Below, piece by piece: positions 205 through 23,465 of a DNA stretch of 62,000 nt; the first letter of the stretch is position 1; every line of letters begins with the position of its first letter. The stretch is from Octopus vulgaris (lineage: Eukaryota). The stretch is from the NCBI GenBank assembly GCA_951406725.2, contig OX597818.1, positions 27,858,001 to 27,920,000 of the forward strand. The letters run 5' to 3'. Below the pieces are notes generated by a model. That model did no database searches, was not told the origin of the DNA, and was given only the letters and a program-made list of their open reading frames with translations. Made by a program: the position numbers and the translations under genes.

Positions 205-242
<38 letters not shown>

Positions 243-254
243 GTATATGTATAT

Positions 255-634
255 ACCTATATTTATATTTCGTTTTTGGATTTGGTTTGCAAGATATTTT
301 ATATGAGTTCGTGTGTTGAACCATATTCTGTTGTGTCTGGGGTGAGTCATTTTCTTTTTGTGCCTTATAATGTAACACACTCACCAGTAAAATTTCCACT
401 TATGTCTTATTTTTATTTTCCTAAAATTTTCGTTGGGTCTTGCAACCTTTTCAATAGTCTTGACTCTAATTTCTCAGAGATGGATGATGTTTATGTCAGT
501 GTTTCAAGGAAAGCTATTGTATAGGTTGCAAGATACAACGAAAATTTTAGGAAAATAAGATAAATGGAAATTTTTCTGGTGAATGTTCTACATTATAAGG
601 CACAAAAAGAAAATGACTCTCTCCAGTCACAACA

Positions 635-635
<1 letters not shown>
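255..635. repeat. Inverted pair of an interspersed repeat (arms ~328-458 and ~513-635) around exon A1
   Basis: Arms are near reverse complements; a third copy of the family lies at ~40950-41150. Confidence 0.8.
478..519 (+). pseudogene. Disrupted micro-exon A1: EMDDVYVSVSRK(AI), donor replaced by an inserted repeat
   Basis: ctcag acceptor intact; no GT at the homologous position; the sequence from 513 matches the end of the inverted repeat copy. Confidence 0.65.
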
Positions 636-691
<56 letters not shown>

Positions 692-1099
692 TACATACAT
701 ATATATACATATACATATATATATGTTTCTTTTACATGTTTTAGCCCTATGGCTGTGGCCATGCTGGGGTTCTTTTCTCATTTTCCATCTACCAAATACA
801 CTCACACAGCTTTCGTCGGCCCATGCTCATTGTAGGATACACATGCTGTGAGACTGATCCCAGAACAATGTGTTTCAGAAGTGGATATCTTATGACAAAT
901 ATACACCTGAAAAGCATTGAGAATGGCAAAATTTCATAACATGTACCAGCAACCTCTGGTAAACATTCCTACTCAGTTTTGATATTTTACCCTTTTATTG
1001 GTCCTTACCTTTAATAATGCAATATATAAGACAAACGCAACCAGTTTCAGCTGACTCCCTCCTAACCTAACATTGGAATATCCATATTTTTGCTACACT

Positions 1100-2095
1100 G
1101 CTTGAATCTACATCATTCGATGACCATAATGCTTATTCTTACTATGCTGCTAACCCCAGCTCTTACCTCCAGTAGGGGCCACAATCTTAACATACCTGAA
1201 TGCTTGAATGTTGTCAGGTGGAAGAGAGAACAGATGAAGCATGCTTAAGAAACAAACACCACAAGAACCCACTTCTTTTCAGGTGCTGAATAACATCCCT
1301 CCTACCCAATACTTACTACACATTCGCTTCCCAGTTTTCAGAGTTGGCACTGTCAATGTTGGCACACTGAAAGGGAGGTCTAGCGAGATTGTAGAGATGC
1401 TTGAAAGGTTGATGTATGCTGCATACAAGATGTAAGATGGAGTGGAGCTTCAGCTAGGGTCCTCACAGGCAAGGCACATAGGTATAAAGTTTTCTGGCAA
1501 GGTAACATGGATGGTGTAGGGGGTGTAGGCATAATCCACACAGAGAAATGGGTGGATAAGGTCATAGAGGTTGCTAGGGTGTGTGATAGAGTGCTTAAGC
1601 TCAGGCTAGTCCTGCAGAACAGCACAGCTACAATTATCTCTGCCCCACGTGTGGGGCTAGCAAATGATCAGAAGGACCACTTTTATGATACCCTTCTACA
1701 GGCTACCTCAAAGAGGAGTAGCAACGACCGCATCTTTGTGGTTGGAGACTTTAATGGGTATGTTGGGTGGGAATCTGGTATCTTCACTGGGGTACATGGT
1801 GGCCATGGTATTGGCACCCGAAACGATGAGGGAACCAGGCTACTGGAGTTCTGTGATGCATGTAACCTTTTAATCTGCAACACTAACTTCAGGAAGCCAG
1901 ACAGCCACCTTATAACCTATCAATCAGGGGATTCTGTTAGCCAGCTTGATTTCATTCTCATCAGACAGCAGGACACAGGGCTGCTCTTAAATACAAAGAT
2001 CCTCCCAGATGAAGAATGTGCCCCCCAGCATAGGCTAGTCATTAGTGACTTTAGGCTGGAGGCCAGAAGGATACCAAGAAACAGACCAATCTGCT
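1100..2095 (+). mobile_element. RTE-clade LINE 5' fragment (AP endonuclease)
   Basis: VGTVNVGTL, VGDFNGYVG, NDEGTRLLEFC, SQLDFILIR, QHRLV motifs. Confidence 0.85.
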
Positions 2096-2206
2096 GTATA
2101 TAAAGTAAGTCCTGAAGTTGACTTTCTATTTTCTGTGCAATATCAATATATTTAAGAACTATCTCCCCAAACAATAAAAATGCCCACTTTTATTTCACTT
2201 TTAAAG

Positions 2207-2266
2207 CTGAGAGAGAGCAAGATGCTGAAGATAATGAGCCCAAATATTTACCTATGAAACACCCAG
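2207..2266 (+). CDS. Micro-exon B1 (60 nt, phase 1-1) of tyrosine-motif tail gene: (A)EREQDAEDNEPKYLPMKHP
   Basis: ttttaaag acceptor, CAG|gtaagt donor, open frame; homologous copies at 2765, 8613 and 10577. Confidence 0.75.
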
Positions 2267-2764
2267 GTAAGTACAATCAATATTGTTAGTACATAGCATG
2301 ATCTTTAAAATGATCTTAAAGAAAAACCAACAATCATGAAATGTATATTCTCATTTAGTCTTTTAACATATTTCTACATGCATACATGTGTGTGTGAGTG
2401 TGTTGAGTATCCAAAGTTACTCCTGCTTGTGGATTACTCTAGCAAGACAGAAGCCTTAGAAAGAATCCAATTTCTATAAATGTATTTGTGAGTGGCTACA
2501 TCATCATTTTTAATTATCAGTTTAAATATTGAAGTGATGGTATGAGTATAATACTGTACTAAACATTGATGGAATAAAAATTAGTGTCAGTACATTCTGA
2601 GATCAAAACCTATTGAGGTGAGAGACTCATAGATAAAGTACTAAGCTTAAGAAAGTATATAAGATTAGTCCTGGTGTTGACTTATTACTTTCTGTGCAAT
2701 ATCAATATATTTAAAACATTATCTCCAAAAAATAAAGATGCCCATTTTTATTTCATTTTTAAAG

Positions 2765-2806
2765 CTGAAGATAGTGAACCTAGATATTTATGCATGAAAC
2801 ACTCAG
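2765..2806 (+). pseudogene. Dead micro-exon B2: AEDSEPRYLCMKHS
   Basis: 18-nt deletion relative to B1; donor reads gaaagt instead of gtaagt. Confidence 0.65.
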
Positions 2807-3050
2807 GAAAGTATTATCAATATTGTTAGTATATAGTATGATCTTCAAAATGATCTTAAAGAAAAACCAACAATCATGAAATGTATATTCTCTTTTAGTC
2901 TGTTAACATATTTCTACATACATATATGTGTGTGTGAGTGTGTTTGAGTCTATCTCATTATTGTTTATTATGGCAATATAACAACAATACTAACATGATA
3001 TAAATGTAATTTATAGCCATGTTTTAAATTCTTGCATTAATGTCTTAAAG

Positions 3051-3092
3051 ACATGGATGATGTTTTTGTCAGTGTTTCAAGGAAACCTGATG
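3051..3092 (+). CDS. Micro-exon A2 (42 nt): DMDDVFVSVSRKPD
   Basis: cttaaag acceptor, ATG|gtaaat donor; homologous to 478, 8884, 10881, 14560. Confidence 0.7.
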
Positions 3093-3289
3093 GTAAATGC
3101 ATAAGTAATCCATAAAAAAATTACATGCACTGGAGCAAGAGTTAGCAAATATCATGGTTCAGTGTTTCATTGAGTAGTATAGTCAGTTTAATGTATGCCT
3201 TTTATCATTTACTTGCCTCAGTCATTGCACTGCAGCAATGCTAATGCCTCACCTTGAAGGGTTTAGTTCAACAAATATTGGTTTCTCAT

Positions 3290-3600
3290 GCCAGACTGCT
3301 AAACTCTCTTGATATAAACAAACCAACATCCATTGTCAAGTGGTAGTGGCAGTGGACAAACACAAAGACATATATATACATACATACATACATACATACA
3401 TACATACATACATACATACATACAAATAGATAGATAGATATAGATATAGACACACACACTCGAAAGGCTTCTTACAGTTTCCATCAACATAATCTTTTCA
3501 CAAGGCTTTCATCTGCCCAGGATACAGTAAAATACTCTCATAGTGGGACTGAACCCAGATCATGTGTTTCAAAAGAAAGTTTCTTACCACATGGTCACAC
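3290..3600 (-). mobile_element. tRNA-derived SINE copy
   Basis: Matches copies at 14225-14395 and 34075-34440. Confidence 0.6.
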
Positions 3601-4469
3601 CTGCGAAATTTTTAAGAATGGAAAAAATTTCATTGGATATAAAACAAATTTCTTGCAGAAATTCATATCTAATTCTCATATTTTAGGCTTTTATTAATCC
3701 CAAATTGTGAGTTCCACCCACATGCAACAAAACTTCTCACATGCCCTACCCCAACAAACCAACCTACATCTCTACATCTCTTCTCTTTTTTTAGTATTTT
3801 TGTTGCTTTTGTAAAATCTACATCTCATTTCCTTCTTCATAAACTATGCCTAACTCTCACTCCTCAATCCTGTCCTCACGGCCCTCTTCCTCTGTATCAT
3901 GGCTATCCGGTAGCCCTCCCAACTCTATATATATACCCAGTTTTCATCAACCACTCCCTTCCTCCACACTCAATAATCCCTCTTCCTTTGCAATATCTTG
4001 CCACGTATATTATGACATTTGAACCTCTAGGTTATGGCATGGCACATGCCACCATCTATATCTCTCACTTCCTTTACGCAATCATCCCATTTATATTCTA
4101 ATCCCCATTCGTTGTGAGTATGCCTAGCATTTCACCACCATCTCTATCCTGCTGTCTTCAGTGCACCTGCTTTTCTCTTCATTTCTGATTTCTGTCTGTC
4201 TGTCTCTCTCTCTCTGGCCGGGTAAACTTGTATCTCCTCTATAACTAGACACCTTTTTCTGTCTCTCTGTAACCTTTGTAACTCATTAATCATCCATGAA
4301 CTCAAAATGGCTAATTAGGTCAAGTTTTTTATTTGTGAAAAACTGTTGTTTTGAATTTGCTGTAGAAAGTGGTCTGCATTTGTGGTGTTGTGTAAGTTTG
4401 GGGGTGCTAGGAATGTGGCTCCATCATCAAGGGGGCAGCAGCCCGAAAAAGTTTAGGAACCACTGCTCT

Positions 4470-4640
4470 AAAGCAAAGAGCAGTAATGTTTTAATATGGA
4501 GTTAAGTTTATATCCAATCATAGAGTGACCAGTGGTTTCACATCCACTAGCCCCATGGATGACTTGTCAGAATCTAAAGCCCAAGACAAATATAATTCTT
4601 CAACTCTGGGAGGCAGGAATCCATTACAGTCAGTTAGTTT
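4470..4640 (+). pseudogene. Degraded paralogue of the exon C region
   Basis: Aligns by eye with 18775-18950; the donor position reads acaaat. Confidence 0.5.
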
Positions 4641-4747
4641 AATAAGTAACCAAAAAATAAACAATCTGTGTCAGCAAGGATGGGTTATCCCCCTTACACC
4701 AGTTCATCAGCTATTGGTTCTTGGCCTGGAGATGTTCTATCTGGTGT

Positions 4748-5148
4748 CTCTTCTTCTTCTTCTTCTTCTTCTTCTTCTTCTTCTTCTTCTTCTTCTTCTT
4801 CTTCTTCTTCTTCTTCTTCTTCTTCTTCTTCTTCTTCTTCTTCTTCTTCTTCTTCTTCTTCTTCTTCTTCTTCTTCTTCTTCTTCTTCTTCTTCTTCTTC
4901 TTCTTCTTCTTCTTCTTCTTCTTCTTCTTCTTCTTCTTCTTCTTCTTCTTCTTCTTCTTCTTCTTCTTCTTCTTCTTCTTCTTCTTCTTCTTCTTCTTCT
5001 TCTTCTTCTTCTTCTTCTTCTTCTTCTTCTTCTTCTTCTTCTTCTTCTTCTTCTTCTTCTTCTTCTTCTTCTTCTTCTTCTTCTTCTTCTTCTTCTTCTT
5101 CTTCTTCTTCTTCTCCTTCTTCTTCCTCCTCCTCCTCCTCCTCCTCCC
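4748..5148. repeat. ~400-bp (TTC)n/(TCC)n tract, tail of the adjacent SINE
   Basis: Directly visible; explains the poly-L/S/F/E/K ORFs. Confidence 0.95.
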
Positions 5149-5149
5149 C

Positions 5150-5630
5150 CAATCAGGATTCATGCCATTAGCCTCAAAGAATAATCTCTAATTCGAGCCT
5201 GCTCTAAGCTACTAAGAATGCATGTGGCAACTTGAAGATCCACCCACCACACGCGATAGCTGGTGGTTGCACGGGCGCGAAAGCTACGTTGTTATCCTCA
5301 TTCTGTAAACAGTGGCTTTTAACAGGTGGAGAGCTGAACCATCCTGGGGTACAGAAGATTTACAATCTAGACTAGGGTCTGAAAGTTTACCACACCATAG
5401 TGGGTTATACCATGGTTCCTCTGCTTTGTGGCTTAAGTAGGAAGAAAGAGTGAGAGAAAGTTGTGGTGAAAGAGTACAGCGGGGTCCCCACCCCACCTCT
5501 CCGGAGCCTCGTAGAGCTTAGGTGTTTTTGCTCAATAAACACTCACAATGCTCAGTCTTGGGATTGAAACCGCGTTCTTACGATCGTGAGTCCACTGTCC
5601 TAACCACTGGGCCATTGCGCCTTCACTCTT
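5150..5630 (-). mobile_element. tRNA-derived SINE with (GAA)n tail
   Basis: Minus-strand head GGCGCAATGGCCCAGTGGTTAGG...GGTTTCAATCCC (A/B boxes). Confidence 0.7.
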
Positions 5631-8597: not shown

Positions 8598-8612
8598 TTT
8601 TTGATACTTTAG

Positions 8613-8666
8613 AAGAGCAACATGCTAAAGTAAGTTATCCTGAATACTTATGCATGAAAGTACCAG
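8613..8666 (+). CDS. Micro-exon B3 (54 nt): EEQHAKVSYPEYLCMKVP
   Basis: tactttag acceptor, CAG|gtaata donor, open phase 1-1 frame. Confidence 0.65.
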
Positions 8667-8883
8667 GTAATAACTGTCAATATTGTTAGTACACAGCATG
8701 ATCTTAGAAATCATCTTGAATAAAGACAGAAAGCTAACAATTATGAAATGCATCACACTGGAAATTTTGCCTATCAATGCATGTGTTTGTATGTGAGTGT
8801 GTTTATTATGGTAGTATCTGCACAATATTAACATAGTATTTATTTATAACCATGTATTTAATTCTATTTTTAATTTTTTAAAG

Positions 8884-8925
8884 ACAAGGACAGTGTTTAT
8901 GTTAATGTTTCAAGGAACTCTGGTG
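8884..8925 (+). CDS. Micro-exon A3 (42 nt): DKDSVYVNVSRNSG
   Basis: tttttaaag acceptor, GTG|gtaagt donor, open frame. Confidence 0.8.
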
Positions 8926-9168: not shown

Positions 9169-9237
<69 letters not shown>

Positions 9238-9240
<3 letters not shown>

Positions 9241-9580: not shown

Positions 9581-10576
9581 TCTATATGTATATATATTCT
9601 TTTTTTATTGATATATAATGGTTTTCTTTCAGCTTCTTGTCATTGGCTCAGGGCTGTAGTAAATTACACTATTACACTTGCATAAGGTGTTTCACAGTGG
9701 AAATGAACCACACAGCTACACCTGCAAAACTTTGAAAATGTTAAAATTTCATAGCATATGCAATACAATTCTTGCAGACATTCCTATTTAACTCTGATAT
9801 TTTACCTTTTTGTTAAACTTTACCCTTAATATTGCAGTTCATAAGCATATATTTTTAAACCTTTATTCATATGAATAAACCAAATAATCATGTAACTAAT
9901 ATCGAATTCTGTGGATGTTTGCCTAGACATGAAACACAAAGTATGGAAGAAATTTGCTATGGGGAATGTGATCAACTGTTGTTGTTGAGTATTCAAAGTC
10001 ACTCCTGCTTATGAATTACCCTAACAAGAAAGTAATTTAAGAAGGAATTTTTATTTCTGTGAAGGTATTTGTTAATGGTATCTCTTAATGATAACATTGT
10101 CACCTTTAAATATCAGTTGAATATTGAAGTGATGGAAATACCCTACCAAATATTGACATAATCAACTTTAGTGACAGCGCATTCTGAGATCAAATCCTAC
10201 TTTTACCTAATTAATAGCACTTTGCTTATGAAATAGAATTTTTAGTGCCATTTTACTGAGGAACCCTTTTTCTAAACTCTAACTTTGAAATGGCACATTA
10301 ACCAAAATTGCCTTAGTCCTTTTGTTCATACCAAATAAATTTCTTAGGTAATATTTATCTTTTTACAATATGTGAATGAGAGGATAAAGGACCTCTATTG
10401 TACATGAACTTCTACTGGATTTAGATAACTTCTGTTTCTAAATTCATGTTTCTATATAAAATATATATATATATATATATATACATGCTACTATCTGTGC
10501 CACTTACAAAATATTTAGAACATCCTCTCCAAATAATAAATGTACCCATATTTCATTTAATTTCTCGATGCTGTAG

Positions 10577-10630
10577 AAGAACAACATGCTGAAGTTAATG
10601 AACCAGAATATCTTTGTATGGAAGAACTGG
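10577..10630 (+). CDS. Micro-exon B4 (54 nt): EEQHAEVNEPEYLCMEEL
   Basis: ctgtag acceptor, TGG|gtaagt donor, open frame. Confidence 0.75.
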
Positions 10631-10880
10631 GTAAGTAGAATCAATATTGTTAGTACACAACATGTTCTTAGAAATAATCTTAAATAAAAACAGAAAGCTA
10701 ACAATAATGAAATGTATCACTCACTCTTTGTCTGTTAACATATGTGTATATGCATGTATGTGTGTGTAAGTGTTTTTGATTTTATCTCATTAGTGTTTAT
10801 TATGGTAGTATCAATACAACATTAACATAATATAAATGTTAGTTGTAGCTGTTTTTAATTCTTTTTTGAATTTCTTAAAG

Positions 10881-10922
10881 ACATGGATGATGCTCATGTC
10901 AGCATTTCAAAGAAACCCGGAG
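10881..10922 (+). CDS. Micro-exon A4 (42 nt): DMDDAHVSISKKPG
   Basis: ttcttaaag acceptor, GAG|gtaagt donor, open frame. Confidence 0.75.
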
Positions 10923-11789: not shown

Positions 11790-13950
11790 CCTTGGATATG
11801 TGTGACAGCACAGAGGGCCTCTTCAGCAGGATCAATGAATGAAACCGTGCCTACAATCTGAGGGATGCATAATAGGCAATATGGACGAAGTACCCTTATA
11901 CCAATCCATTGATGTTGATTTTGCTGTGGAGAAATGTGTGAAGGTGATCAAGGAGAGTGACATGGAGTTTTGTGATGTTCACAAAGAAGAACTGGGCCTC
12001 CTCCTGAGACTGACATGTAACAATGATTACTTACATGAACATGACCTTAATTGTTTCTGCCCCACTAGATCAGTAAGAGGTTGACTCACTACTATAACTT
12101 CTATGGCCAAGAAAACCCCAAGAGAGAGAGGTGGAACAGATGGATCAGAGCTATACAGACCCCTAAAAATGCTGATCAGATTACAAAAGATGTTCGCACA
12201 TGCAGTGAGTGCAAGTACCTAAACCACATTCAAGTTTAATGACGAGATATACACCTAAAAGGAAGTTGCAGCTATTAATGTCAGTATTGCTAGTGATGTG
12301 ACTATATATGGTATGGTGGGATATAAAACTCAAAGAGAAATTAGCGAAGAACTCCATAACACTAACTATGTACTCCCGCTATGTAGATGATATCAAGATA
12401 ATAGCCAAAGCACCCCTACAAGACTATGTTAATGATCTAGAAGCTAACACTATGGAGAGCATCCAGCAAATAGCTAACTCCATCCACCAGAGTATTAAAG
12501 TAATAATAGACTACCGTAACAAGTACCCAAACTATAGGCTACCAGTTTTGGACATGGAACTCTTGCTAAGAACAGTAAGGTCCAGATCCTTCACACCCAT
12601 TATACCAAATCCATGGCCTCTAAATGCCTGGTCCACAAGAAAGCAGCTATTTTGGACAACTCCAAGTGCAATATCCTTATAGCAGACTTCATGAGAGTGA
12701 TGAGGAATGTGTCTCATCTGTGCAACTGTATGGATTGGAAAGATACAGACAATGCTTCATCCACAGCATGCAGTTCTCTAGTTAAAACCAAAGGAACAGG
12801 ATTAGAGTACACAAAGGAGCCAGAGCTAAGTATGAAGCTATCATAGTGAGTGATGCAAAAGGACTAAATACAGGAAATGCAGGAGTAAATATTGGGAAAG
12901 CACAGAAAGGACCAGAAAGAAAGGTACATAAGGTCAACTTATGATATGACAACAAAAAATACCAGAGTATCATGTTCAATGATGCTACCTCTGGCAGTCA
13001 ACTAGCATACTCTTTTAGAAAAACATTAGATAAGGCTAAAGTTGTTAGCCATGCACTTTTTTGCCCCTAGGATGAACCCACAGGTTAACTAAGGTTAGGA
13101 ATATAGTGTATAGCTTATGATGTACTGAGGGGTGGTGCAGAAACATGACAGTTATTTGCATTGGAGAGACAACATGCAGCATAGGAGTGCATATAGGTGA
13201 ACACTGGTGGGAGTTCTCAAAGAAGAGAAAGGTTTGTCAGTTCTCTACCAACATGCTCAAGCAGAAAATAGCAGCTTCCTTAATAGCATAGTAGTTAAGG
13301 TATTATCAACACATAGTACTGACATGGTACTTAGACAGATCACAGAGGCTAGAAACATAGAAATAGACAGACTGAGACTCAACAGAAAACATGATTGGAA
13401 CAATAACACCTGCCACCACACCATACAACATGACGACTAAAGACAGAAGAAAGAAACAAAAAAGATACAAACAGTGTAATACATACACAATAAGTAAATA
13501 TCCACATACCTATGATAGGTATAAGAAATAGAGCTAGATAAAAAAAACTATAAAGGGCATGAATGCAAACAACATAGGAAGTGAGCCCATATACACACAC
13601 AAACACACAAAAATAACTTCACAAATGGCTGTAACAATATGAACAACACAGCCAACAATGACAACAGCAACAGCAGTAACAACAACAATATCTACTTCAA
13701 TTGCAGCAGCATGGACAATCACACAAATACAGAGCGATAGAGGAATGGTACCAAAAATTAGTGTCGTGGGCAGCAGCAGCAGCAGCAATGAGGGAAGAGA
13801 TGGGGCTGATGGCAGGGTCATAGTGTTACTAAGAACACTGACACACACACACTCACATACACATGTACACACACACACACACATACAGAAGCAAATGCAT
13901 GCACATATACGGATCTATATCAGAGAAGAAAAGAATGGACAAAGTGGAGC
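11790..13950 (+). mobile_element. Decayed Penelope-like element (RT plus GIY-YIG remnants, low-complexity 3' region)
   Basis: YSRYVDDI, YRLPVLDM and LRQITEA-like motifs; many stops and frameshifts. Confidence 0.65.
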
Positions 13951-14559: not shown

Positions 14560-14601
14560 ATTTGGAGGATGTTTATGTGAATGTTCCAAAGACACCTGAT
14601 G
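14560..14601 (+). CDS. Micro-exon A5 (42 nt): DLEDVYVNVPKTPD
   Basis: Long T-tract plus aaag acceptor, ATG|gtaagt donor, open frame. Confidence 0.8.
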
Positions 14602-14959: not shown

Positions 14960-17660
14960 AGAGATATTAACCTGTTGAGGGACACTGACCAGATCTGTGA
15001 TGGTGCAAAGTCCCCTCTCAACCAAAAATAATGTGGTGGTGGAACAATGTTGTTGACAAGGCTATTAGAGAAAAGAAACAGGCATGGAAGGACTGGAAGA
15101 ACTGTGGCAGCAGAGAATTGTATCAGACTGCCCGAAGGGAAGCAAGGAGACAGGTTTATTTAGCCAGAGGGGAAGCAGATAGGAAAAAACTTACCAATGT
15201 TCTGTGCCGTGAGAACCAAAGACTTGAGGTATTTCGTGTTGCAAGACAGTGTATGAGAGAGAATCATGATGTTGTAGGAGAGAAATGTGTTCGCATGGAT
15301 GATGGTTCACTTGCACTAAACGAGGCTGCAAAGAGAGAGGTTTGGAGATACCACTGTGAAAGGTAGCTCAATAAAAAAAATGAATGGGAGAAAGAGAGTC
15401 TACTGAATGTCAACCCAACAGAGGAACCTGCTCTCCGAGTTGGCAGTACCTTGGTAGATAAAGCAATTAAGAGTATGAAGACAGGGAAAAGCCCCATCAG
15501 GAATCACTGTAGAAATGCTCAAAATATCTGGCAGTGTTGACTATTGCCTAGTCACCCATATAGTTAACCAGGTGATACACGAAGGAGTCACACCCAACGA
15601 CTGGTATAGCAGCGTAATAGTCAACTTCTACAAAGGTAAAGGTGATGCTTTAGATACAAATAATTACAGAGGTATCAAGTTGTTAGATCAGGTAATGAAG
15701 GTCACAGAGAAGGTCATAGCCCAACTAATTAGGGAGAGAGTCAGTTTAGATGAGATGCAGTTTGGGTTCGTGCCAGGGAAAAGCACCACTGATGCTATAT
15801 TTCTGGTTAGACAGCTGCAGGAGAAATAACTAGCCAAAGATAAACCTCTGTACCTGGCTTTCATTGACATGGAGAAAGCCTTTGACAGGGTCCCCGGATC
15901 CCTTATCTGATGGTCAATGATGAAACTAGGGATATATGAATGGTTAGTAAGAACTGTGCAAGCTATGCACAGGTTGGCAACGACTACAGTGAAAAATAAT
16001 TCTAGGTAGTGGTAGGGATCCACCAAGGTTCAGTCCTCAGCCCCCTCCTATTTATCATAGTCCTCCAGCCAATAACAGAGGAATTCAAGACAGGATGCTC
16101 CTGGGAGCTCCTCTATGCTGATGACCTTGTTCTAATTGCTGAGTCACTATCAGAACTAGAGGAGAAGTTTCAGGTGTGGAAACAAGGATTAGAATCAAAG
16201 GGCCTTAGAACCAACCTAGCTAAAACCAAAGTCCTAATAAGCAGGAAGTCAGGCAAACCACAAATCCCTTCAGGTAGTTGGCCCTGCTCGATCTGTAGAA
16301 AAGGCCTAGGTAGAAACCCCATAAGATGTACCCTGTGTAAGTTACGGACACATAAGAGGTGCAGCAATATCAAAGGAAGGCTAACTGGGAAGATAGTTTT
16401 TGTATGTGGCAGATGCTCAGGAGCAATAAACACTGAAAATGTGCGGAGAACAACTTCCACCACATTCCAGGGAGAAAAACTAGAAGTAGTTGATAGCTTC
16501 CATTATCTAGGTGACCAAGTCAGTAGCAGGGGAGGGTGCACTGAGAGTGTAGCTGCTAGAATAAGAATAGCTTGGGCAAAGTTCAGAGAGCTCTTACCTC
16601 TGCTGGTGACAAAGGGCCTCTCGCTCAGAGTAAAAGGTAGAAATTATGATGCATGTGTATGAACAGCCAAGCTACATGGCAGTGAAACATGAGCTGTGAT
16701 TGCTGAGGACATGCGTAAGCTTGCAAGGAATGAAGCCAGTATGCTCTGATGGATGTGTAATGTTAGTGTGCATATTTGACAGAGTGTAAGTACCTTGAGA
16801 GAAAAGTTGGACCTAAGAAGCATCAGATGTGGTGTGCAAGAAAGACAACTGTGCTGGTATGGCCATGTGGCAAGAATGGATGTGGATAGCTGTGTGAAAA
16901 AGTGCCACACCGTTGCGGTTGAGGGAACCTGTGGAAGCAGTAGACCCAAGAAGACCTGGGATGAGGTGGTGAAACATAACCTTCAAACATTGGACCTCAC
17001 CGAGGCAATGACTAGTGACCGGAACCTTTGAAAATATGCTGTACTTGAGAAGACATGGCAAGCCAAGTGAGACCATAACTTCATGACGTATGCCAGGGGT
17101 GTAACCAGCCCACTTATATAATGCGTACCTTTCCTTCATTAGACACTAAACTCTGCTTGCGAAGACCTGTTGAGGCAAGTGAAATCGAAATCGCAATTGA
17201 AATCAAATTCTATGACTGGTATCCGTGCTAGTGGAGTGCTAAGAGTATCATCCAAGCCAGAGCAACAAACTAGCTTCTGTGCCGGTGGCATGTAAAAAGC
17301 ACCATTCGAGCGTGATCATTACCTGCATCGCCTTACTGGCACTTGTGCTGGAGGCTTGTGAAAAATCATTCAAGTGAGGTCATTGCCAGTGCCGCTGGAC
17401 TGGCTCCTGTGCAGGTGGCACAAAAGCACCATTTGAGCATGGCCGTTGCCAGTACCATCTGAGTGGCCCTCGTACTGATGGCACATAAAAGCACCCAGTA
17501 CACTCTTGGAGTTGTTGGCATTAGGAAGGGCATCCAGCTGTAGAAACTCTGCCAGATCAGATTGGAGCCTGGTGCAGCCATCTGGTTCCCCAGACCTCTG
17601 TCAAATCGTCCAACCCATGCTAGCATGGAAAGCGGACGTTAAGTGGATGATGATGATGAT
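14960..17660 (+). mobile_element. RTE-group LINE, 5'-truncated, decayed RT with Cys-rich insert, tandem-repeat 3' UTR and (GAT)n tail
   Basis: NYRGIKLL, QFGFVPGKSTTDAIF, GIHQGSVLSPLLF, LLYADDLV, CSIC..CTLC..HKRC..CGRC, GRPKKTW-like end. Confidence 0.9.
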
Positions 17661-17829: not shown

Positions 17830-18110
17830 ACTAGCCCCTCTCTTTAGTCTTCAATGGAGAATGATATTCTACAAGGTTCAAGAGAGAGTTACAATAAAGT
17901 ACTCCTTCCACATCTAGTACAGTGCTGTGATATGCACAATCACATCCAAAGAAGAGCCATCCAACTGACTGGTATTGAGTCACTAACAGACACTCTTCAG
18001 TTCCTGGTTCACAGACATGCTGTCTTCTCTCTTTGTCTTTTCTATCACTACCAGACACAGAGGTCATTAGGTCTCAGTACCTTTGAGCTGGTTGGTTTTG
18101 TCTTTACAAC
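17830..18110 (+). mobile_element. CR1/Jockey-type LINE C-terminal fragment
   Basis: IQRRAIQL...LVHRHAVFSLCLFY resembles the post-RT region. Confidence 0.45.
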
Positions 18111-18851
18111 AATGTGACACCCCTGTCCCACTTGCCTTTCTAACTCTTGTCATTTTTGGTGTATCCAACATCCTTAGCCCACACTAATCCTTTTTCCTGT
18201 CTTCCAGAACATCATCCTTCAGGAATCTTCTCTTTGTTATAGCATTCTCTGTAGGTATTGGCCTGCAACAGTTCAAATGGAACATTAATAGCAAAGCTCG
18301 TCAGTCTTAGAAGACTTATAAAGGTCATGGGCAATGCCTCAGCTTCCAAACTCAATAAGAAAAATACATGCACATATACATGCATGAATACATTCATGTC
18401 ATCTATTCATTTGTGTTTGGATAGTGGTTTTTACATGCCACCAGCACATGAGCCAGTTGTAGGGTACTGGCATGGGCCACATTCAGATGGTGCTTTTTAT
18501 GTACCACCAGCATAGAGGCTGGTCAAGCGTTCCTGGCATCGATCACATTTGGATAGTGCTTTTTACATGCCACCAGCATCGGAGCTAGTCATGGGGCACT
18601 GGCCACAGCTACGATTTTGATTTTACTTGATTCAACAGGTCTTCTCAAGCATATCATATCAACTGACACATCAGGGGTACTCTTAAATGGGCCGGACATG
18701 CAACACTGGCATCAGCCATGGCTGTGATCTCACTTTAGTTCTTCCCAATCACAGTATATCTCCAAAGGTCTAAAGTATAGAGCAGTAATGTATTTATATG
18801 CAGTTAAGAATTTGTCCAGACATAGAGATCAATGGTTTTGTATCCTTACAG

Positions 18852-18893
18852 AGTTTAGCTCCATGGATGACTCATCAGACTCTAAACCTGAAG
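18852..18893 (+). CDS. Candidate micro-exon C (42 nt, GC donor): EFSSMDDSSDSKPE
   Basis: ccttacag acceptor, AAG|gcatgt donor; same length and phase as the A exons; degraded paralogue near 4550. Confidence 0.5.
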
Positions 18894-19229
18894 GCATGTA
18901 GTTCTTCAATTATGGGACATAGGAATACAGCAGGTAGCATTTGAAATGCCTGCAGGGGCTGTAAATTTCTTACCATGAATTCAGTAATCCTGGTTTCAGG
19001 GAGTCTTTGAGGATCCTTTCACACTCAGCCATACAAAGTTTGTAGCATCTGCTCCTGTTAATATAGCAACCCGGCTGCTCTATGATCCTCCACTTGATAG
19101 TGTATTGGGTTCCTCTATCTTTGAGATTCCATATGTGGCTCTCCAGAGATGTGACATATTTTCTTCCCAGAATCCTGAAAGGGAACCTGTGGTTGTAGAG
19201 ATGCCACTAGAAGGCAGTCTTGGCTTGGG

Positions 19230-20030
19230 AGTTGGTTGTGTTCACATTTATGGCACATTTTCTGGGCTTGTGGGTGTTGTTGCCACTGATGTTACTGGAG
19301 CTGCTATCAGCGCTATTATTATAAGTCATGGGAATCTGACAGTATCGCTGCAGCTGTTGTTGTTGTAATGGTATCCCTGGCGTTGCTGCCGATTTTGCCG
19401 ATGGTGATGGTAATACTGCATGTGGGGCCAGAAGCCATGCTGGTGCTGCTGGTGTTGGTATGGTCGTCAACTCTGGCCATAGTGCTGTTGCTGGGTTTGT
19501 TAGCATCAGTGCTGGTGTTTCTGTCACTGTCGCTGCTGATGCTGGATGATCAGTTGCTGCTATTACTATGGTCACTAGGTATCACCAGAGCTTCATAAAT
19601 GACTCTCTCAGCCATGTATTGCACCGCCACCTCTTGAGCAGTTATTGAAATCACTGCAAGAGCAACCAACTACCTCCCACATTTTATGGATGTTGCTTGT
19701 ATACTTTTCATGCAGACACCTGTGTGTCTGCGTGAAGTGTTTGTCTACTTACCTGAGGAATAGTCTTCTCGCACAAGATTTTGTGTGAGAAGGGTGGGAC
19801 AAACCAAACGATGCTCCAGTGGTGGTGCCTCTTTTGTGGGTGCTAGGGCCTGGCATAGATAACCTGTCCTCACTGACTAGATTGTTTATTCTTTGTTTAC
19901 TTACTAACTGACCATAACAGATTCCAACCTCCCAGAGTCAAAGAACTATATGCCTTCAGCTTTAGAGTCTGACAAGTCTTCTCTGGGGCTAAGCCCTTTA
20001 TGGATGCAAATCTATTGGTCACTCTATGAC
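19230..20030 (-). mobile_element. Penelope-like element 3' fragment
   Basis: Reverse-complement homologue of ~6450-7290. Confidence 0.6.
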
Positions 20031-20214
20031 CAGACATATACTTAACTACACATAAATATATAATTTGAATATGGGAAAACGAATTTCCAAATCAATCAGG
20101 TACAACCCTTTAGCATTACAGGCATTTGCATATCGTGCAGTTGGGTTTTAATTATCATATATTTATATATATTTTTTTTAGAAATATACAAAACATATTA
20201 TATATAATAGAAAT

Positions 20215-20487
20215 TAATGATAATTCAGTTTCGGGGATTAATAGCTATGCGGGCATTCTATTTCAAATTATGCAAAAATACAACCTAACGAGTATATCTG
20301 AAGGTAAACTCGTGGTATCTGTTTAAACATCATGAAATAATACTTGAAAGGATAAAACCAGTACACCAGCAGGGTATAAAATATACATCCTTAATTATCT
20401 CCTATTTAAGTTAAAATTAAAATGATCAATTATGAAGGAACTACACATGTTTGAGTATCAGAAGATTATAATGTGTGTGTGTGTGTA

Positions 20488-20541
<54 letters not shown>

Positions 20542-21035
20542 CATCAGATTTACAATTCTAACAGTACATCTTCAGGTTATTTTTCAAAATATTGTTAATC
20601 TAATTTTACATCACCTTAAAATTAAGCGTTAAATTAAACATTAAAATTTAAAAATTAAACTTTACAAAATTAAGAATTAAAAATTATAAATTATAAATTA
20701 TACATTATAAATATGAATTAGTACACATATATCAAGCTTATAAAGTCTAATATATAATGTCAAATATAAAATATAAAATTATACATCAGAATAAAATGTC
20801 TGATTAAATGTGAAAAATATATGTAAAATACAGATACATGCTGTCTTTTGATGGAATCAGAATCTATACCCTGCTGGTGTACTGGTTTTATCCTTTAAAG
20901 TATTTTTTCATGATGTGCATATAGATACCACAAGTTTACCTTCAGATATACTTGTTAGTTTTTTTTTTTGTTGCATAATCTGAAATAGAATACCCACATA
21001 TATATTAATCCCCAAAACTGAATTATCATATATAT
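20215..21035. repeat. Foldback/MITE-like structure with ~170-bp inverted arms
   Basis: 20215-20385 is the reverse complement of ~20865-21035. Confidence 0.7.
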
Positions 21036-21582
21036 ATGTATATACATATTGAGGCGTGGCTGTGTGGTAAGACGCTATCTTTCCAGCCACATGGTTCTGT
21101 GTTCAGTCCCACAACATGGCATTTTGGAAAAGTGTCTTTGAGAGGCAATGTCTGGTAACCAAGACCTTTGGCAGTATGTTGTGCTTGAGAAGACTTGTCA
21201 AGCCAAGTGAAACTGTAGTCATGGCCAATGCAGTTGGCATGTGAAAAGCACCTTTTGAGTGTTGGGCTTCACAGAGGCAATAGCAAATGATTTAGACCTC
21301 TGGCCTTATGTCATGCTTGAGAAGAAGGCCCATCAAACCAAGTAAAATTACAGTTGTGGCAGATACTGGTGTCACACAAATGGCACCTGTGCTGGTGGCT
21401 TGTAGAAGCACACATTATACTCTTGGAGTGGCTGGCATTAAGAAAGGCGTCCAGTTGTAAAAACCATGGCAAATCAGACTGGTGTCTGGTGCAGCCTTCC
21501 AGCTTGCCAGCCCTGGTGAAACTGTCCAACCCATGCCAGAATGGACAATAGATGTTAAATGATGATGATGATGATGATGATG

Positions 21583-21617
<35 letters not shown>

Positions 21618-21887
21618 AATATTTAAATGGGTGAATGAATTAACCTTTGGAAAATTCAATAAACCGTTATCAGGGTAGCAAAATTCACGCCAGTAACACG
21701 GTTGACGTGACCTATTCAAAGGTAAAAACTCCGGGTTAATGTGCAGAAATTTGTGTATTATAAATAAATAAATAAATGGAGTTGAATGAAGAAGCTATTA
21801 AAATTCTTTTACTTTCGACATATGTTTCTATGACTGCCTAAATCGTAATTGTTATAATGTCTTGTTGTTGAGAGAGACTCTCTCTTT

Positions 21888-21969
21888 CTTTCCTGATGAG
21901 AAGATTGCATTTTACACTGTTTATTCCTTTGGAATAAAACCATGTTGTCTTCAAAACATATGTCGAAAG
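21888..21969 (+). ncRNA. Type I hammerhead motif with G12>A
   Basis: CUUUC CUGAUGA GAAGA...UCUUC AAAA CAUAUG UC GAAAG; the inverted partial copy at 21812-21828 retains GAAAC. Confidence 0.6.
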
Positions 21970-22061
21970 TAAAAGAATTTTAATAACATCTTCGTTCAAC
22001 TCCATTTATTTATTTATCTATATATATATATATACATATACACATATATATACATATATAT

Positions 22062-22452
22062 ATACCAGCAGTATCACCTGGCGTTGCTCGGGTTTGTTTC
22101 GACCTTTAGAATTGGAATTTTTGAAAAGTAAAAATTTTGCATTATGTAGCTTGTTATTCTCTTTAAGTGAACATTTTTCTGGTTGAAATACACCGAAAAA
22201 TGGTGACACAGCAGTCAAAAAATCGTAAAAAATAGGGATTATCATAGAAAAAAAAAGCACCTTTTTGATGTAAATAATTTTTGGTGTTAACATGGTCCGA
22301 TTTGGATTTATTCTTCTGCGGAAGGAAGAGCAAGCCTTCTGCTATCATACTTTCAATTTTGGTCAACTTGTGCCACAGGGTCTCGGAGGAGATAGTGTTA
22401 GTTGAAGGCTACCAAACTTGCCATACACAGACAACTTCAGCTTTATATATAG
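22062..22452 (+). mobile_element. Non-autonomous Helitron-like element (Lep1-like ends)
   Basis: 5' accagcagtatcacctggcgttgctcggg; 3' catacacagacaacttcagctttatatatag. Confidence 0.4.
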
Positions 22453-23454
22453 AGAGATTTAACTTACATGACCCTAGTAAATTGGATGAGAGAAATAAGC
22501 AAAGCTGGTGATCATAAAAGTTAAGTCCCTATGTGGAAATACAGCTAAGCATTGATTTAAATAGGATATTTCAAAATTTAGCTATGAAGTGGCTTATTTT
22601 ACTGTTTAATTTGAGTCATTAGCTGTATTATAATAGTTAACACACTATGAAATCATGAGGGAGAGATTCAATTCTTATCATTTTTTCACTTTCATATTTT
22701 TTCTCTTTTGCATTGATAATTTATAATGCACAAATAGGTTCTATATACGAATTTAGTAAAAGAGAGAGAGAGAGAGCGAGAGAGAGAGAGAGAGAGTGTG
22801 TGTGCATGTGTGGGCACGCATGTGCATGTGTTTGTATGTGAATCAGCTATCACTTGGAATGTAATAAAATATCAATTGTACCATTTTGATGGTAGGGATA
22901 TTCACCACACCACTGTTTACAGACATAGATTGAATTGAATGTTAGACATTCATATCAGTTTCAGACAATGTCATTTGTTAAACATCCGCTGTTCATTTAC
23001 TGATCATTTATTAGGATCAAGTGTTCAATTTTAATCTATGATTTTATTCAAAATATATAGAAATTGTAAATAAAATGGTACCTGAAAATATGTAACAGTC
23101 TCTCTTTCTGAGTAAAAAGCTTTATGTGCTAGCAAGTTACTAAAACTTTAGAACTTATTGCTCTAATGAGTCCATGTTTTCATTATTGTAACTTACTGAA
23201 TTTTCACATCTTTATATTTAATTTCTGGGATCATCATTAATTTTTTTTTTATGAAGCACTGTGCTTATAAGCATTAAGATAACAATTTGTGCACCACATT
23301 TTAAAATTCCAATCATTCTAGTATTTAAGCAAACATGATCTTATATTTAATTATTTTTCTGCAAAGCATGTAATTATTTTCACAAATACCAAGCGTCAAA
23401 TAATTGTTTAATAGATCAGGATCTCATGTACATTTTTATTCTTTTATTTTGTAG

Positions 23455-23465
23455 GTTACCAGTGA
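23455..23465 (+). CDS. Coding part of candidate terminal exon: (G)YQ-stop
   Basis: Strong acceptor ttttattttgtag; phase-1 reading GGT TAC CAG TGA; followed by about 800 nt of non-repetitive AT-rich sequence. Confidence 0.5.

What the first reader, a model, noticed from the sequence alone, without database searches (positions are those of the whole stretch)
478..23465. Tandem micro-exon array encoding a modular, frame-safe phosphotyrosine signalling tail
Seen: nine homologous micro-exons of two types, too short for the ORF track. Type B (YxxM): 2207, 2765, 8613, 10577. Type A (YVxV): 478, 3051, 8884, 10881, 14560. Seven have canonical AG/GT ends, and all seven are phase 1-1 with lengths of 42, 54 or 60 nt. 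Spliced with exon C and the stop exon they read AEREQDAEDNEPKYLPMKHP-DMDDVFVSVSRKPD-EEQHAKVSYPEYLCMKVP-DKDSVYVNVSRNSG-EEQHAEVNEPEYLCMEEL-DMDDAHVSISKKPG-DLEDVYVNVPKTPD-EFSSMDDSSDSKPE-GYQ*. Flanking introns are also duplicated (e.g. ~905-1030, ~3600-3700, ~9720-9850). Known: pYxxM binds PI3K p85 SH2 domains; pYxN, classically YVNV in Shc and LAT, binds Grb2; acidic residues before Tyr favour kinase phosphorylation. Inference: a receptor or adaptor tail in which each SH2 docking site is a skippable cassette, so splicing or copy number could tune PI3K versus Ras output. I do not recognise this architecture from a cephalopod gene.
Basis: partly seen in the sequence, partly recalled or inferred. Interest (0 to 1): 0.88.

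Follow-up and report, generated by a model that had tools for sequence, protein, structure and literature searches.

The report
Octopus receptor tail built from cassette micro-exons
The window holds the 3' end of an uncharacterised, octopus-only immunoglobulin-type surface receptor gene whose intracellular tail is built from tandemly duplicated, frame-neutral micro-exons, each encoding one short tyrosine motif that annotated isoforms include or skip one at a time.

Summary
Seven micro-exons of 42, 54 or 60 nt have AG/GT ends, are all phase 1-1 and splice into one open frame. Two further copies are dead.

A search with the spliced peptide hit only Octopus proteins. The best hit (E = 4e-108) is XP_036359227.1, O. 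sinensis LOC115212116, a multi-Ig, single-pass receptor. It contains four of the window's exons at 100% identity.

The O. bimaculoides ortholog, LOC106879981, has the same cassette order and ends ...KKPD-GYQ*. In two paralogs, all 16 cassettes mapped are single 42- or 60-nt phase 1-1 exons. RefSeq isoforms differ by exactly one such exon.

- "Exon C" is not credible. It has a GC donor, sits in an inverted-repeat element and is absent from every family protein.
- Exon B2 appears in no gene model.
- Only two of the four spliceable A exons carry a tyrosine.

The array continues upstream of the window.

Motif readings (YxN as Grb2-type, YxxM as p85-type) fit the sequences, and family-wide conservation of Tyr and Asn supports the first. 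Phosphorylation, partners and "tuning" are untested.

The architecture resembles the PECAM-1 tail (exons 9-16), here amplified into a two-type array. I rate it a new variant of a known kind, of moderate interest.

The parts
478..519 (+). A0: dead A-type copy (MDDVYVSVSRKAI, then TAG). It has an acceptor AG but no GT donor.
   Evidence: Its 3' end is replaced by a dispersed repeat that flanks it in inverted orientation (211-467 on + and 514-640 on -, with other copies at 40895-41150).
2207..2266 (+). B1: 60-nt phase 1-1 exon encoding (A)EREQDAEDNEPKYLPMKHP, with a YLPM motif.
   Evidence: AG...GTAAGT. It is 100% identical to XP_036359227.1 residues 974-993.
2765..2806 (+). B1': dead B-type copy (EDSEPRYLCMKHS). 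The donor is GA, and 18 nt are missing at the 5' end.
   Evidence: It lies in a local duplication, 2096-2408 matching 2655-2949 at 83%.
3051..3092 (+). A1: 42-nt phase 1-1 exon encoding DMDDVFVSVSRKPD. Phe stands where the family has Tyr, and Ser where it has Asn.
   Evidence: AG...GTAAAT. It is 100% identical to XP_036359227.1 residues 994-1007.
8613..8666 (+). B2: 54-nt phase 1-1 candidate exon encoding EEQHAKVSYPEYLCMKVP (YLCM). It looks intact but is in no gene model.
   Evidence: AG...GTAATA with an open frame. It is absent from XP_036359227.1, from all five isoforms of the O. bimaculoides ortholog, and from all 42 proteins retrieved.
8884..8925 (+). A2: 42-nt phase 1-1 exon encoding DKDSVYVNVSRNSG (YVNV).
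   Evidence: AG...GTAAGT. It is 100% identical to XP_036359227.1 residues 1008-1021. The ortholog has DMDGVYVNVSKNSG.
10577..10630 (+). B3: 54-nt phase 1-1 exon encoding EEQHAEVNEPEYLCMEEL (YLCM).
   Evidence: AG...GTAAGT. It is 100% identical to XP_036359227.1 residues 1022-1039. The ortholog has EEQHAEVNEPEYFCVEDL. It is 54 rather than 60 nt because the acceptor moved 6 nt, in frame.
10881..10922 (+). A3: 42-nt phase 1-1 exon encoding DMDDAHVSISKKPG. His stands in place of Tyr.
   Evidence: AG...GTAAGT. The ortholog has DMDDAHFNISRKPD at the same position in the tail. It is not in the O. sinensis model.
14560..14601 (+). A4: last cassette, a 42-nt phase 1-1 exon encoding DLEDVYVNVPKTPD (YVNV).
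   Evidence: AG...GTAAGT. The ortholog has DLDDVYVNVSKKPD followed directly by GYQ* in isoform X3.
18852..18893 (+). At most it is a repeat-derived, exonised fragment.
   Evidence: The donor is GC. It lies in one arm of an inverted repeat (18788-18926 against 20061-19921, 77%), with a third copy at 4467-4623. Its peptide is in none of the 42 family proteins.
23455..24297 (+). Terminal exon. In phase 1 it reads (G)YQ, with the TGA at 23463-23465, followed by the 3' UTR.
   Evidence: It is homologous to the terminal exons and downstream sequence of paralogs (window 23338-23850 matches L001 66481-67015 at 80%; 23559-24297 matches L002 98403-99287). L002 reads cag|ATTACCAGTGA, giving DYQ*, exactly at the end of its CDS.
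2267..2310 (+). Conserved intronic element just 3' of each B exon, GTAAGTAcAATCAATATTGTTAGTACAtAGCATGATCTT. The other copies are at 2807-2850, 8667-8710 and 10631-10674.
   Evidence: A 15-nt core is invariant among the four window copies. The core occurs only at these four sites (4 sites, 6 matches counting both strands, against 0.57 expected). Positions +7..+40 are as conserved as the exon (0.69) across 10 copies in two species, against 0.37-0.44 further downstream.

Best explanation
Window 1-24.3 kb is the 3' part of an Octopus-restricted immunoglobulin-superfamily type I receptor gene. In O. sinensis the region is annotated within LOC115212116. The ortholog in O. bimaculoides is LOC106879981.

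The ectodomain, the transmembrane exon and at least four more cassette pairs lie upstream of the window. The cytoplasmic tail is encoded by a tandemly duplicated array of two kinds of micro-exon.
- A exons are 42 nt. The family consensus is D-M-D-G/D-x-Y-V-N-V-S-K/R-K-P-G/D.
- B exons are 54 or 60 nt. The family consensus is E-E-Q-Y/H-A-E-V-S-x-P-x-Y-L-E/C-M/L.

Every exon begins and ends in phase 1 and is a multiple of three. Any subset can therefore be spliced together, and the last cassette joins a terminal exon that reads xYQ-stop.

Shown here: the exon anatomy, the receptor context, the conservation of this architecture in paralogs and in a second species, and annotated isoforms that differ by single cassettes.

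Inferred: after ligand-driven clustering, a cytoplasmic tyrosine kinase phosphorylates the acidic-context tyrosines. The A motif (pY-x-N) then recruits a Grb2/Drk-class SH2 adaptor, and the B motif (pY-x-x-M) recruits a PI3K p85-class SH2 subunit. On this reading the tail acts as a multivalent scaffold, like LAT, LAX or CD19, and its valency and A:B ratio are set by gene-specific copy number and by cassette splicing.

In this particular gene the likely mature tail end is ...B1-A1-A2-B3-A3-A4-GYQ*. That gives two YxxM sites and two YVNV sites, plus two tyrosine-less A spacers. B2 is optional or unused, and exon C is not part of it.
For: Exon anatomy and open frame.

Homology to receptor tails: the HMMER search of 1.84 billion representatives gave 8 hits, all Octopus, with the best at E = 4e-108. 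Four window exons are 100% identical to XP_036359227.1.

Receptor nature: Ig_3, I-set and C2-set_2 Pfam hits, with a hydrophobic span followed by a basic stretch before the cassettes.

Orthology:
- Window 34003-61919 is collinear with the upstream flank and first exons of O. bimaculoides LOC106874069 at about 90% identity.
- The LOC106879981 tail shows the same cassette order (equivalents of B1, A1, A2, B3, A3, A4) and a GYQ* end.

Architecture conserved: 16 of 16 cassettes in L001 and L002 are single 42- or 60-nt AG..GT phase 1-1 exons. There are no indels in 21 aligned exon copies, against 14-32 gap runs in flanks of equal length. The move from 60 to 54 nt came from an in-frame 6-nt acceptor shift.

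Skipping: isoforms X1-X8 of LOC106874069 and X5 of LOC106879981 differ by exactly one cassette.

Motif constraint: among 39 distinct A cassettes, Tyr is kept in 35 and Asn at +2 in 33, while neighbouring positions vary. Among 22 B cassettes, the second Tyr is kept in 21, and +3 is Met in 14 and Leu in 5.

Motif meanings: YxN as a Grb2 motif, YVNV as in LAT and LAX, and YxxM as a p85 motif (PMC3342071). A tail encoded by many short exons that carry tyrosines and are alternatively spliced is documented for PECAM-1 (PMC2132561).
Against: - No transcript reads were available. The isoforms are RefSeq computational models, and I could not inspect their RNA support.
- The O. sinensis model that contains the window's exons spans 780 kb with a nested gene and is chimeric. 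Its junctions are therefore weak evidence.
- Residue-level constraint is not detectable. Window and ortholog cassettes share 67 of 87 residues (77%), as expected under neutrality at about 8-10% nucleotide divergence. Paralog pN/pS is 0.88 for A exons and 0.42 for B exons.
- Two of the four spliceable A exons lack Tyr. The ortholog's B3 reads YFCV and so has lost the Met.
- YVNV and YLxM also fit the generic YxxPhi sorting signal.
- No phosphorylation or binding data exist for these proteins, and nothing shows in which cells the genes are expressed.
Confidence: 0.6

Rival explanations
1. The receptor and the cassette architecture are the same, but the phosphotyrosines recruit other SH2 or PTB partners. 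These could be Src-family or Syk/Shark kinases, SHP-type phosphatases, Crk, Nck or Shc. The family would then behave as activating and inhibitory immune-type receptors rather than a PI3K/Ras scaffold.
For: In most paralogs the B cassette has two tyrosines, EEQ-Y-AE[VI]-x4-Y-L-[EC]-[ML]. This is an ITAM-like doublet in an acidic, Src- or Syk-substrate-like context, and +3 is Leu in 5 of 22. A paralog (P0042) has a different tail with repeated LYAKVNKP units and a C-terminal TIYADL, which is ITSM/ITIM-like. The Ig1 exon of the neighbouring gene evolves at dN/dS = 0.91, as fast-evolving immune-type receptor families do.
Against: The window's own B exons have His or Asp at the first Tyr position. 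The Y-to-Y spacing, with 4 residues between the motifs, is shorter than the 6-8 of a canonical ITAM. Position -2 of every cassette tyrosine is D, G, E or P rather than the S, I, V or L of an ITIM. The near-invariant Asn at +2 in A cassettes is the specific determinant of Grb2-class SH2 binding.
Confidence: 0.2
2. The tyrosine motifs act unphosphorylated, as YxxPhi sorting signals read by AP-2 or other clathrin adaptors. On this view the array controls endocytosis and trafficking of an uptake or scavenger-type receptor.
For: YVNV, YLPM, YLCM, YLEM and YLEL all fit Y-x-x-bulky hydrophobic.
Against: A YxxPhi signal does not need Asn at +2, yet Asn is kept in 33 of 39 A cassettes, along with the upstream acidic residues. 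One or two such signals are enough for sorting, so arrays of 6 to more than 20 are unexplained. The alternation of two distinct motif types is better explained by two readers.
Confidence: 0.1
3. Most of the array in this window is recently duplicated, nearly neutrally drifting sequence. Only a few cassettes are used, and the rest are decaying pseudo-exons or annotation noise without individual function.
For: A0 and B1' are dead. B2 is in no model. A1 and A3 lack Tyr. Introns are as alignable as exons among copies (70-83%). Cassette residues diverge between species at the neutral rate. pN/pS among A copies is 0.88. The O. sinensis gene model is chimeric.
Against: Under neutrality, the chance that six exons keep all 12 splice dinucleotides and stay stop-free in both species is about 0.02-0.05. 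There are no indels in any of 21 exon copies, while the flanks are riddled with them, although these exons were chosen because they are intact. The acceptor shift was in frame. A3 and A4 are used in the ortholog's models. Tyr, Asn, Ser and Pro are conserved family-wide.
Confidence: 0.1

Closest known systems
PECAM-1 (CD31) cytoplasmic domain, exons 9-16
   Same: It is an Ig-superfamily type I receptor whose tail is encoded by a series of short exons. Individual exons carry single tyrosines and are alternatively spliced, giving isoforms with different signalling and adhesion behaviour (PMC2132561).
   Different: The PECAM-1 exons are unique and not homologous to one another. Its tyrosines are ITIMs that recruit SHP-2. 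There is no tandem amplification of two alternating cassette types. No sequence relationship was found: the PDB search with the ortholog gave only weak generic Ig matches (ICAM-1 at 2e-6, CD22 d6-d7 at 1e-3) and no PECAM-1.
Transmembrane adaptors and co-receptors with multiple YxN and YxxM sites (LAT, NTAL/LAB, LAX, TRIM, CD19)
   Same: These have a disordered tail carrying several Grb2-type YxN motifs, including YVNV. In LAX there is also a p85-type YxxM, so the tail acts as a multivalent scaffold after tyrosine phosphorylation (PMC3342071; PMC2212462, seen in the listing only).
   Different: The adaptors have almost no ectodomain and are not built from duplicated symmetric exons, as far as I recall. 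Here the tail is attached to a multi-Ig ectodomain. There is no sequence homology.
Schistosome micro-exon genes (MEGs); comparison from memory, not checked here
   Same: These have runs of very short symmetric exons, each a multiple of 3 nt, whose combinatorial skipping yields protein variants without a frameshift.
   Different: MEGs encode secreted parasite proteins. Here the exons encode the intracellular tail of a receptor, fall into two recurrent homologous types, and each carries a recognisable signalling motif.
Uncharacterised Octopus Ig-like receptor cluster (RefSeq LOC115212116, LOC115212119, LOC115212114, LOC115212249; LOC106879981, LOC106874069, LOC106874055, LOC106880794)
   Same: This is the family itself. 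The ectodomains are 59-94% identical (best local alignments, covering 28-100% of the query) and the A/B cassette tails are shared. The window's gene is a member.
   Different: Members differ in cassette number and order, from 2 to more than 20. In this gene the first Tyr of the B cassette is replaced by His or Asp. No function is assigned to any member, and no paper in the held library names them.

Membership tests
Octopus Ig-like receptor family with A/B cassette tails (RefSeq 'uncharacterized protein' loci) | The tail cassettes are homologous to those of family members. | tested here: met
   phmmer gave E = 4e-108 to XP_036359227.1, with 7 further Octopus hits. Four exons are 100% identical.
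Octopus Ig-like receptor family with A/B cassette tails (RefSeq 'uncharacterized protein' loci) | A multi-Ig ectodomain and a single TM segment lie upstream of the tail. | tested here: inconclusive
   This is met for the proteins that contain the window's exons and for the ortholog (Pfam Ig_3, I-set, C2-set_2). However, these exons lie upstream of the window, and the O. sinensis model is chimeric. The physical link rests on orthology with LOC106879981.
Octopus Ig-like receptor family with A/B cassette tails (RefSeq 'uncharacterized protein' loci) | Each cassette is one symmetric phase 1-1 exon of 42 or 54/60 nt, and the terminal exon reads xYQ*. | tested here: met
   Window. Paralogs: 16 of 16. 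Terminal exon.
Grb2/Drk-class SH2 docking site (pY-x-N) | The sequence is Y-x-N in an accessible, phosphorylatable context. | tested here: met
   A2 and A4 read YVNV. The motif is not met in A1 (FVSV), A3 (HVSI) or A0 (YVSV). Across the family, Y is kept in 35 of 39 and N in 33 of 39.
Grb2/Drk-class SH2 docking site (pY-x-N) | The tyrosine is phosphorylated and binds the SH2 domain. | not testable with these tools
   This needs phosphoproteomics or peptide binding assays.
PI3K p85-class SH2 docking site (pY-x-x-M) | The sequence is Y-x-x-M. | tested here: met
   B1 reads YLPM. B2, B3 and B1' read YLCM. Across the family, +3 is M in 14 and L in 5 of 22. The ortholog's B3 reads YFCV.
PI3K p85-class SH2 docking site (pY-x-x-M) | Phosphorylation-dependent binding of p85. 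| not testable with these tools
   No data are available.
ITIM-bearing inhibitory receptors (PECAM-1, CD22/Siglec, CEACAM1 class) | The motif is [S/I/V/L]-x-Y-x-x-[I/V/L]. | tested here: not met
   Position -2 is D or S in the window's A cassettes (D, G or others family-wide) and P in the B cassettes.
ITAM-bearing activating receptors | The motif is YxxL/I, then 6-8 residues, then YxxL/I. | tested here: not met
   The window's B exons have His or Asp at the first position. In paralogs the doublet is Yxx[VI]-x4-Yxx[ML], so the spacing is too short.
PECAM-1 (homology, as opposed to analogy) | Detectable sequence similarity in the ectodomain or tail. | tested here: not met
   The PDB sequence search with the ortholog found only weak generic Ig hits and no PECAM-1. 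The tail search found Octopus proteins only.
YxxPhi clathrin-adaptor sorting signal | The motif is Y-x-x-bulky hydrophobic in a cytosolic tail. | tested here: inconclusive
   The pattern is met by YVNV and YLxM, but it is not specific. Conservation of Asn at +2 is not explained by it.

The most novel reading that the evidence does not exclude
An octopus-specific, fast-evolving cluster of Ig receptors may use regulated cassette-exon splicing as a combinatorial 'signalling barcode'. The number and ratio of pYxN and pYxxM docking sites on one receptor would be set cell by cell through inclusion of interchangeable phase 1-1 micro-exons. The conserved palindromic element (core CAATATTG) at the start of every intron following a B exon would be the cis-regulator. 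Gene-to-gene copy-number change by unequal crossing-over would supply rapid evolutionary tuning. If so, this would be an invertebrate immune-type or neural recognition receptor system whose diversification sits in the signalling tail, and perhaps in the ectodomain as well.
Probability: 0.25. Interest if true: 0.75.

Novelty: new variant of a known kind. Interest (0 to 1): 0.52.

Why it matters
Cephalopods lack adaptive immunity and their innate recognition receptors are poorly known. Here is a lineage-restricted, tandemly clustered Ig-receptor family with near-neutral or diversifying ectodomain evolution (dN/dS about 0.9 for one Ig exon). Its tails are made of amplified phosphotyrosine-type motifs. 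That makes it a concrete candidate for an immune-type or cell-recognition receptor system.

The gene structure also shows clearly how short linear signalling motifs can be multiplied, lost and shuffled as symmetric exons. It offers a natural system for asking whether splicing sets the valency of a signalling scaffold.

There is a practical point too. The repeated cassettes mislead gene prediction. One model spans 780 kb and is chimeric, so the annotation of this cluster needs long-read transcripts.

Tried and rejected
- **Exon C as a genuine exon: rejected.** It has a GC donor, lies in an inverted-repeat element with three copies in the window, and is absent from all family proteins.
- **ITIM and ITAM readings of the cassettes: rejected.** The residue at -2 and the spacing do not fit.
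- **A local RNA structure around B exons and the conserved intronic element: none found.** The z-scores were -1.8, 0.0, +1.2 and +0.4.
- **Orthologous O. bimaculoides tail DNA, for an exon-versus-intron comparison: failed.** The gene range is 258 kb, so no DNA was returned. The neighbouring locus L002 starts about 10 kb downstream of the homologue of the stop exon.
- **The whole O. sinensis locus and the O. vulgaris adhesion-GPCR locus: failed.** Their ranges are 780 kb and 114 kb.
- **The alternative C-terminal exon of the ortholog (ATMFYTSTH*): no credible match in the window**.
- **Isoforms X1 and X2 of LOC115212119:** they differ only at the N-terminus, not by a cassette.
- **Residue-level purifying selection among paralogous exons or between species: not detected**.
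- **Literature:** searches for the locus names and for octopus Ig receptors with tyrosine motifs found nothing specific.

Full report
**1. The observation**

Seven segments are preceded by AG and followed by GT:

| Exon | Coordinates | Length |
|---|---|---|
| B1 | 2207-2266 | 60 nt |
| A1 | 3051-3092 | 42 nt |
| B2 | 8613-8666 | 54 nt |
| A2 | 8884-8925 | 42 nt |
| B3 | 10577-10630 | 54 nt |
| A3 | 10881-10922 | 42 nt |
| A4 | 14560-14601 | 42 nt |

Five of the seven donors are GTAAGT. The other two frames are full of stops.

Two copies are dead:
- A0 (478-519) has no donor and runs into a TAG.
- B1' (2765-2806) has GA in place of GT and lacks 18 nt at its 5' end.

A masked self-comparison shows that whole B-intron-A-intron units are duplicated at 66-83% identity. 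A six-frame motif scan finds no further copies in the remaining 47 kb.

**2. What the exons belong to**

I searched the spliced peptide, without exon C, against 1.84 billion representative proteins. There were eight hits, all from Octopus.

The best hit (E = 4e-108) is XP_036359227.1, 'uncharacterized protein LOC115212116' of O. sinensis. It has 1220 residues, Ig_3, I-set and C2-set_2 domains, and a single hydrophobic span. Its long tail is made of the same two cassette types.

Window exons B1, A1, A2 and B3 are 100% identical to residues 974-1039 of this protein. At least four more B-A pairs precede them (residues 837-973).

That gene model is unreliable. It spans 780 kb and contains another gene of the family inside it. 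Its N-terminus is shared with an O. vulgaris model that continues into a different tail. Its C-terminal third matches the tail of a separate gene in O. vulgaris and O. bimaculoides.

The cleaner reference is O. bimaculoides LOC106879981. Its tail reads B, A, B, A, then:
- DMDGVYVNVSKNSG (equivalent to A2)
- EEQHAEVNEPEYFCVEDL (equivalent to B3)
- DMDDAHFNISRKPD (equivalent to A3)
- DLDDVYVNVSKKPD (equivalent to A4)
- then GYQ* in isoform X3

Orthology is supported by synteny. Window 34003-61919 is collinear, at about 90% identity, with the upstream flank and first exons of O. bimaculoides LOC106874069. The 5' exons of that gene's ortholog are visible in the window at 55326-55409, 56840-56896 and about 61190-61471.

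**3. Is the architecture a property of the family?**

I mapped the tail peptides of two paralogs onto their genomic loci. L001 is O. sinensis LOC115212119 and L002 is O. bimaculoides LOC106874069.

All 16 cassettes are single exons of 42 nt (A) or 60 nt (B). All have AG and GT ends and are phase 1-1.

In alignments of 11 A and 10 B exon copies with 120-nt flanks:
- The exons contain no indel at all.
- Flanks of equal length contain 14-32 gap runs.
- Exon identity (0.69) exceeds that of most flanking intron (0.37-0.65).

These exons were selected because they are intact, so this result is supportive rather than decisive.

The two 54-nt B exons of the window arose when the acceptor moved 6 nt downstream. 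CTGTGG became CTGTAG, and the old AG was lost. This shift is in frame.

The terminal exon is homologous across paralogs. In L002 it reads cag|ATTACCAGTGA, giving DYQ*, exactly at the end of the CDS. In L001 the same exon is entered in phase 0 and reads on.

**4. Skipping**

RefSeq isoforms X1-X8 of LOC106874069 differ by omission of:
- DVEDVYATISSEPS (14 aa),
- NMDGAYVNISKKPG (14 aa), or
- TVEEQYAEISEPKYLEMKQQ (20 aa),

combined with two alternative C-termini. Isoform X5 of LOC106879981 omits DIDDVYDSVSREPE. Each omitted piece is exactly one mapped exon.

However, these are computational models, and I could not inspect their read support.

**5.

*Exon C (18852-18893).* It has a GC donor. It lies in one arm of an inverted repeat (18788-18926 against 20061-19921), with a third copy at 4467-4623. 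Its peptide occurs in none of the 42 family proteins retrieved. The ortholog joins the A4 equivalent directly to GYQ*. I therefore reject exon C as a regular exon. Rare exonisation is not excluded.

*B2 (8613).* It looks intact but is in no model of either species.

*A1 and A3.* A1 reads VFVSV and A3 reads AHVSI, so two of the four spliceable A cassettes have no tyrosine. The His of A3 is shared with O. bimaculoides.

**6. Constraint**

Between the window and the ortholog, 67 of 87 cassette residues are identical. That is what neutral drift at 8-10% nucleotide divergence would give.

The background divergence comes from two measures: about 90% identity in the syntenic non-coding sequence, and dS = 0.09 in the neighbouring Ig1 exon. 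That Ig1 exon itself has dN/dS = 0.91. The whole family therefore evolves fast.

What is kept is exon integrity and a few positions:
- Under the same neutral model, six exons would retain all 12 splice dinucleotides with probability 0.08-0.14, and would stay stop-free with probability 0.29-0.39.
- Across 39 distinct A cassettes, the pattern D..Y.N.S..P stands out. Y is kept in 35 and N in 33, while the other positions are variable.
- Across 22 B cassettes, the second Tyr is kept in 21, and +3 is Met in 14 and Leu in 5.

The patterns I used to collect cassettes limit which residues are allowed, so these counts are somewhat inflated.

**7. Mechanism**

The steps shown are the gene anatomy, the receptor context and the annotated cassette skipping. 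The rest is inference from established SH2 specificities:
- pY-x-N for Grb2, with YVNV as in LAT and LAX.
- pY-x-x-M for p85 (PMC3342071).

The conserved Asn at +2 argues for a Grb2-class reader rather than a generic YxxPhi sorting signal. The B motif is less specific.

ITIM and ITAM patterns are not met.

The likely tail end of this gene is ...B1-A1-A2-B3-A3-A4-GYQ*. That gives two YxxM sites and two YVNV sites.

**8. Comparison and novelty**

The nearest known architecture is the PECAM-1 tail. Exons 9-16 encode its cytoplasmic domain, tyrosines sit in separate exons, and alternative splicing changes function (PMC2132561).

The difference here is tandem amplification of two homologous, alternating, frame-neutral cassette types. 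They reach more than 20 per model, in a clustered and apparently Octopus-restricted family.

Both the tail search and the ectodomain search returned Octopus proteins only. The nearest solved structures are only generic Ig matches.

No paper in the held library names these loci.

I rate this a new variant of a known kind. It is of moderate interest and testable with existing RNA-seq data.

Noticed in passing
window 2267-2310, 2807-2850, 8667-8710, 10631-10674; also L001 and L002 introns 3' of B exons: The first 40 nt or so of the intron after every B exon is as conserved as the exon (0.69 against 0.37-0.44 further downstream). It has an invariant core, TCAATATTGTTAGTA, containing the palindrome CAATATTG. 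The core occurs only at these four sites in the window. It may be an intronic splicing regulator. No local RNA structure was detected.
   Followed up: partly
window 8607-8613 and 10571-10577: B2 and B3 are 54 nt rather than 60 nt because a new AG arose 6 nt downstream (CTGTGG to CTGTAG) and the ancestral AG was lost. The acceptor shift is in frame.
   Followed up: partly
window 211-467 (+) and 514-640 (-); other copies at 40895-41150: The dead exon A0 sits between inverted copies of a dispersed repeat. The right-hand copy replaces the exon's 3' end and donor, so repeat insertion probably killed this cassette.
   Followed up: partly
window 55326-55409, 56840-56896, about 61190-61471 (+): These are the first three coding exons of the next paralog, the ortholog of O. 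bimaculoides LOC106874069. The receptor genes therefore lie head to tail. Its Ig1 exon has dN/dS = 0.91 (dS 0.09) against O. bimaculoides, which is near-neutral or diversifying.
   Followed up: partly
XP_036359227.1 (P0001), O. sinensis CM016863.1: The RefSeq model that contains the window's exons spans 780 kb, encloses another gene and stitches together parts of at least two or three paralogs. The repeated cassettes evidently mislead gene prediction in this cluster.
   Followed up: partly
P0006 and P0016 (O. vulgaris 'adhesion G-protein coupled receptor G6-like'): Two adhesion-GPCR models carry the same B/A cassettes after the 7TM region, followed by reverse-transcriptase-like sequence. This is either exon shuffling of phase 1-1 cassettes onto another receptor class or a read-through chimera. 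The locus DNA could not be fetched.
   Followed up: no
P0042 (O. vulgaris, LOC115212114-like): A paralog has a different repetitive tail (DV[ED][ED]LYAKVNKP units) and ends in NYAELEF...TIYADLILDS. The TIYADL motif is ITSM/ITIM-like. The family may therefore include members with opposing signalling tails.
   Followed up: no
window 23455-23530 against L001 66621-66704: The terminal exon is read in two phases within the family. Phase 1 gives xYQ*. Phase 0 gives ITSEGPCSSDEQKEPRTCNIITPSRTE* in LOC115212119. In the window, two compensating 1-nt indels scramble about 10 codons of the phase-0 reading.
   Followed up: partly
window 1272-2103, 12308-12682, 15035-17228, 44763-45830 (-), 47763-49475 (-): These are fragments of non-LTR retrotransposons (endonuclease-like and reverse-transcriptase-like ORFs) inside the introns and the intergenic region. 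Several have copies in L001 and L002.
   Followed up: no
window 4749-5125; 1-178: There is a perfect (TCT)n microsatellite of about 126 units in the intron between A1 and B2. There is also a GC-rich 60-nt tandem repeat of 2.9 copies at the window start, related to sequences at 17279-17495.
   Followed up: no
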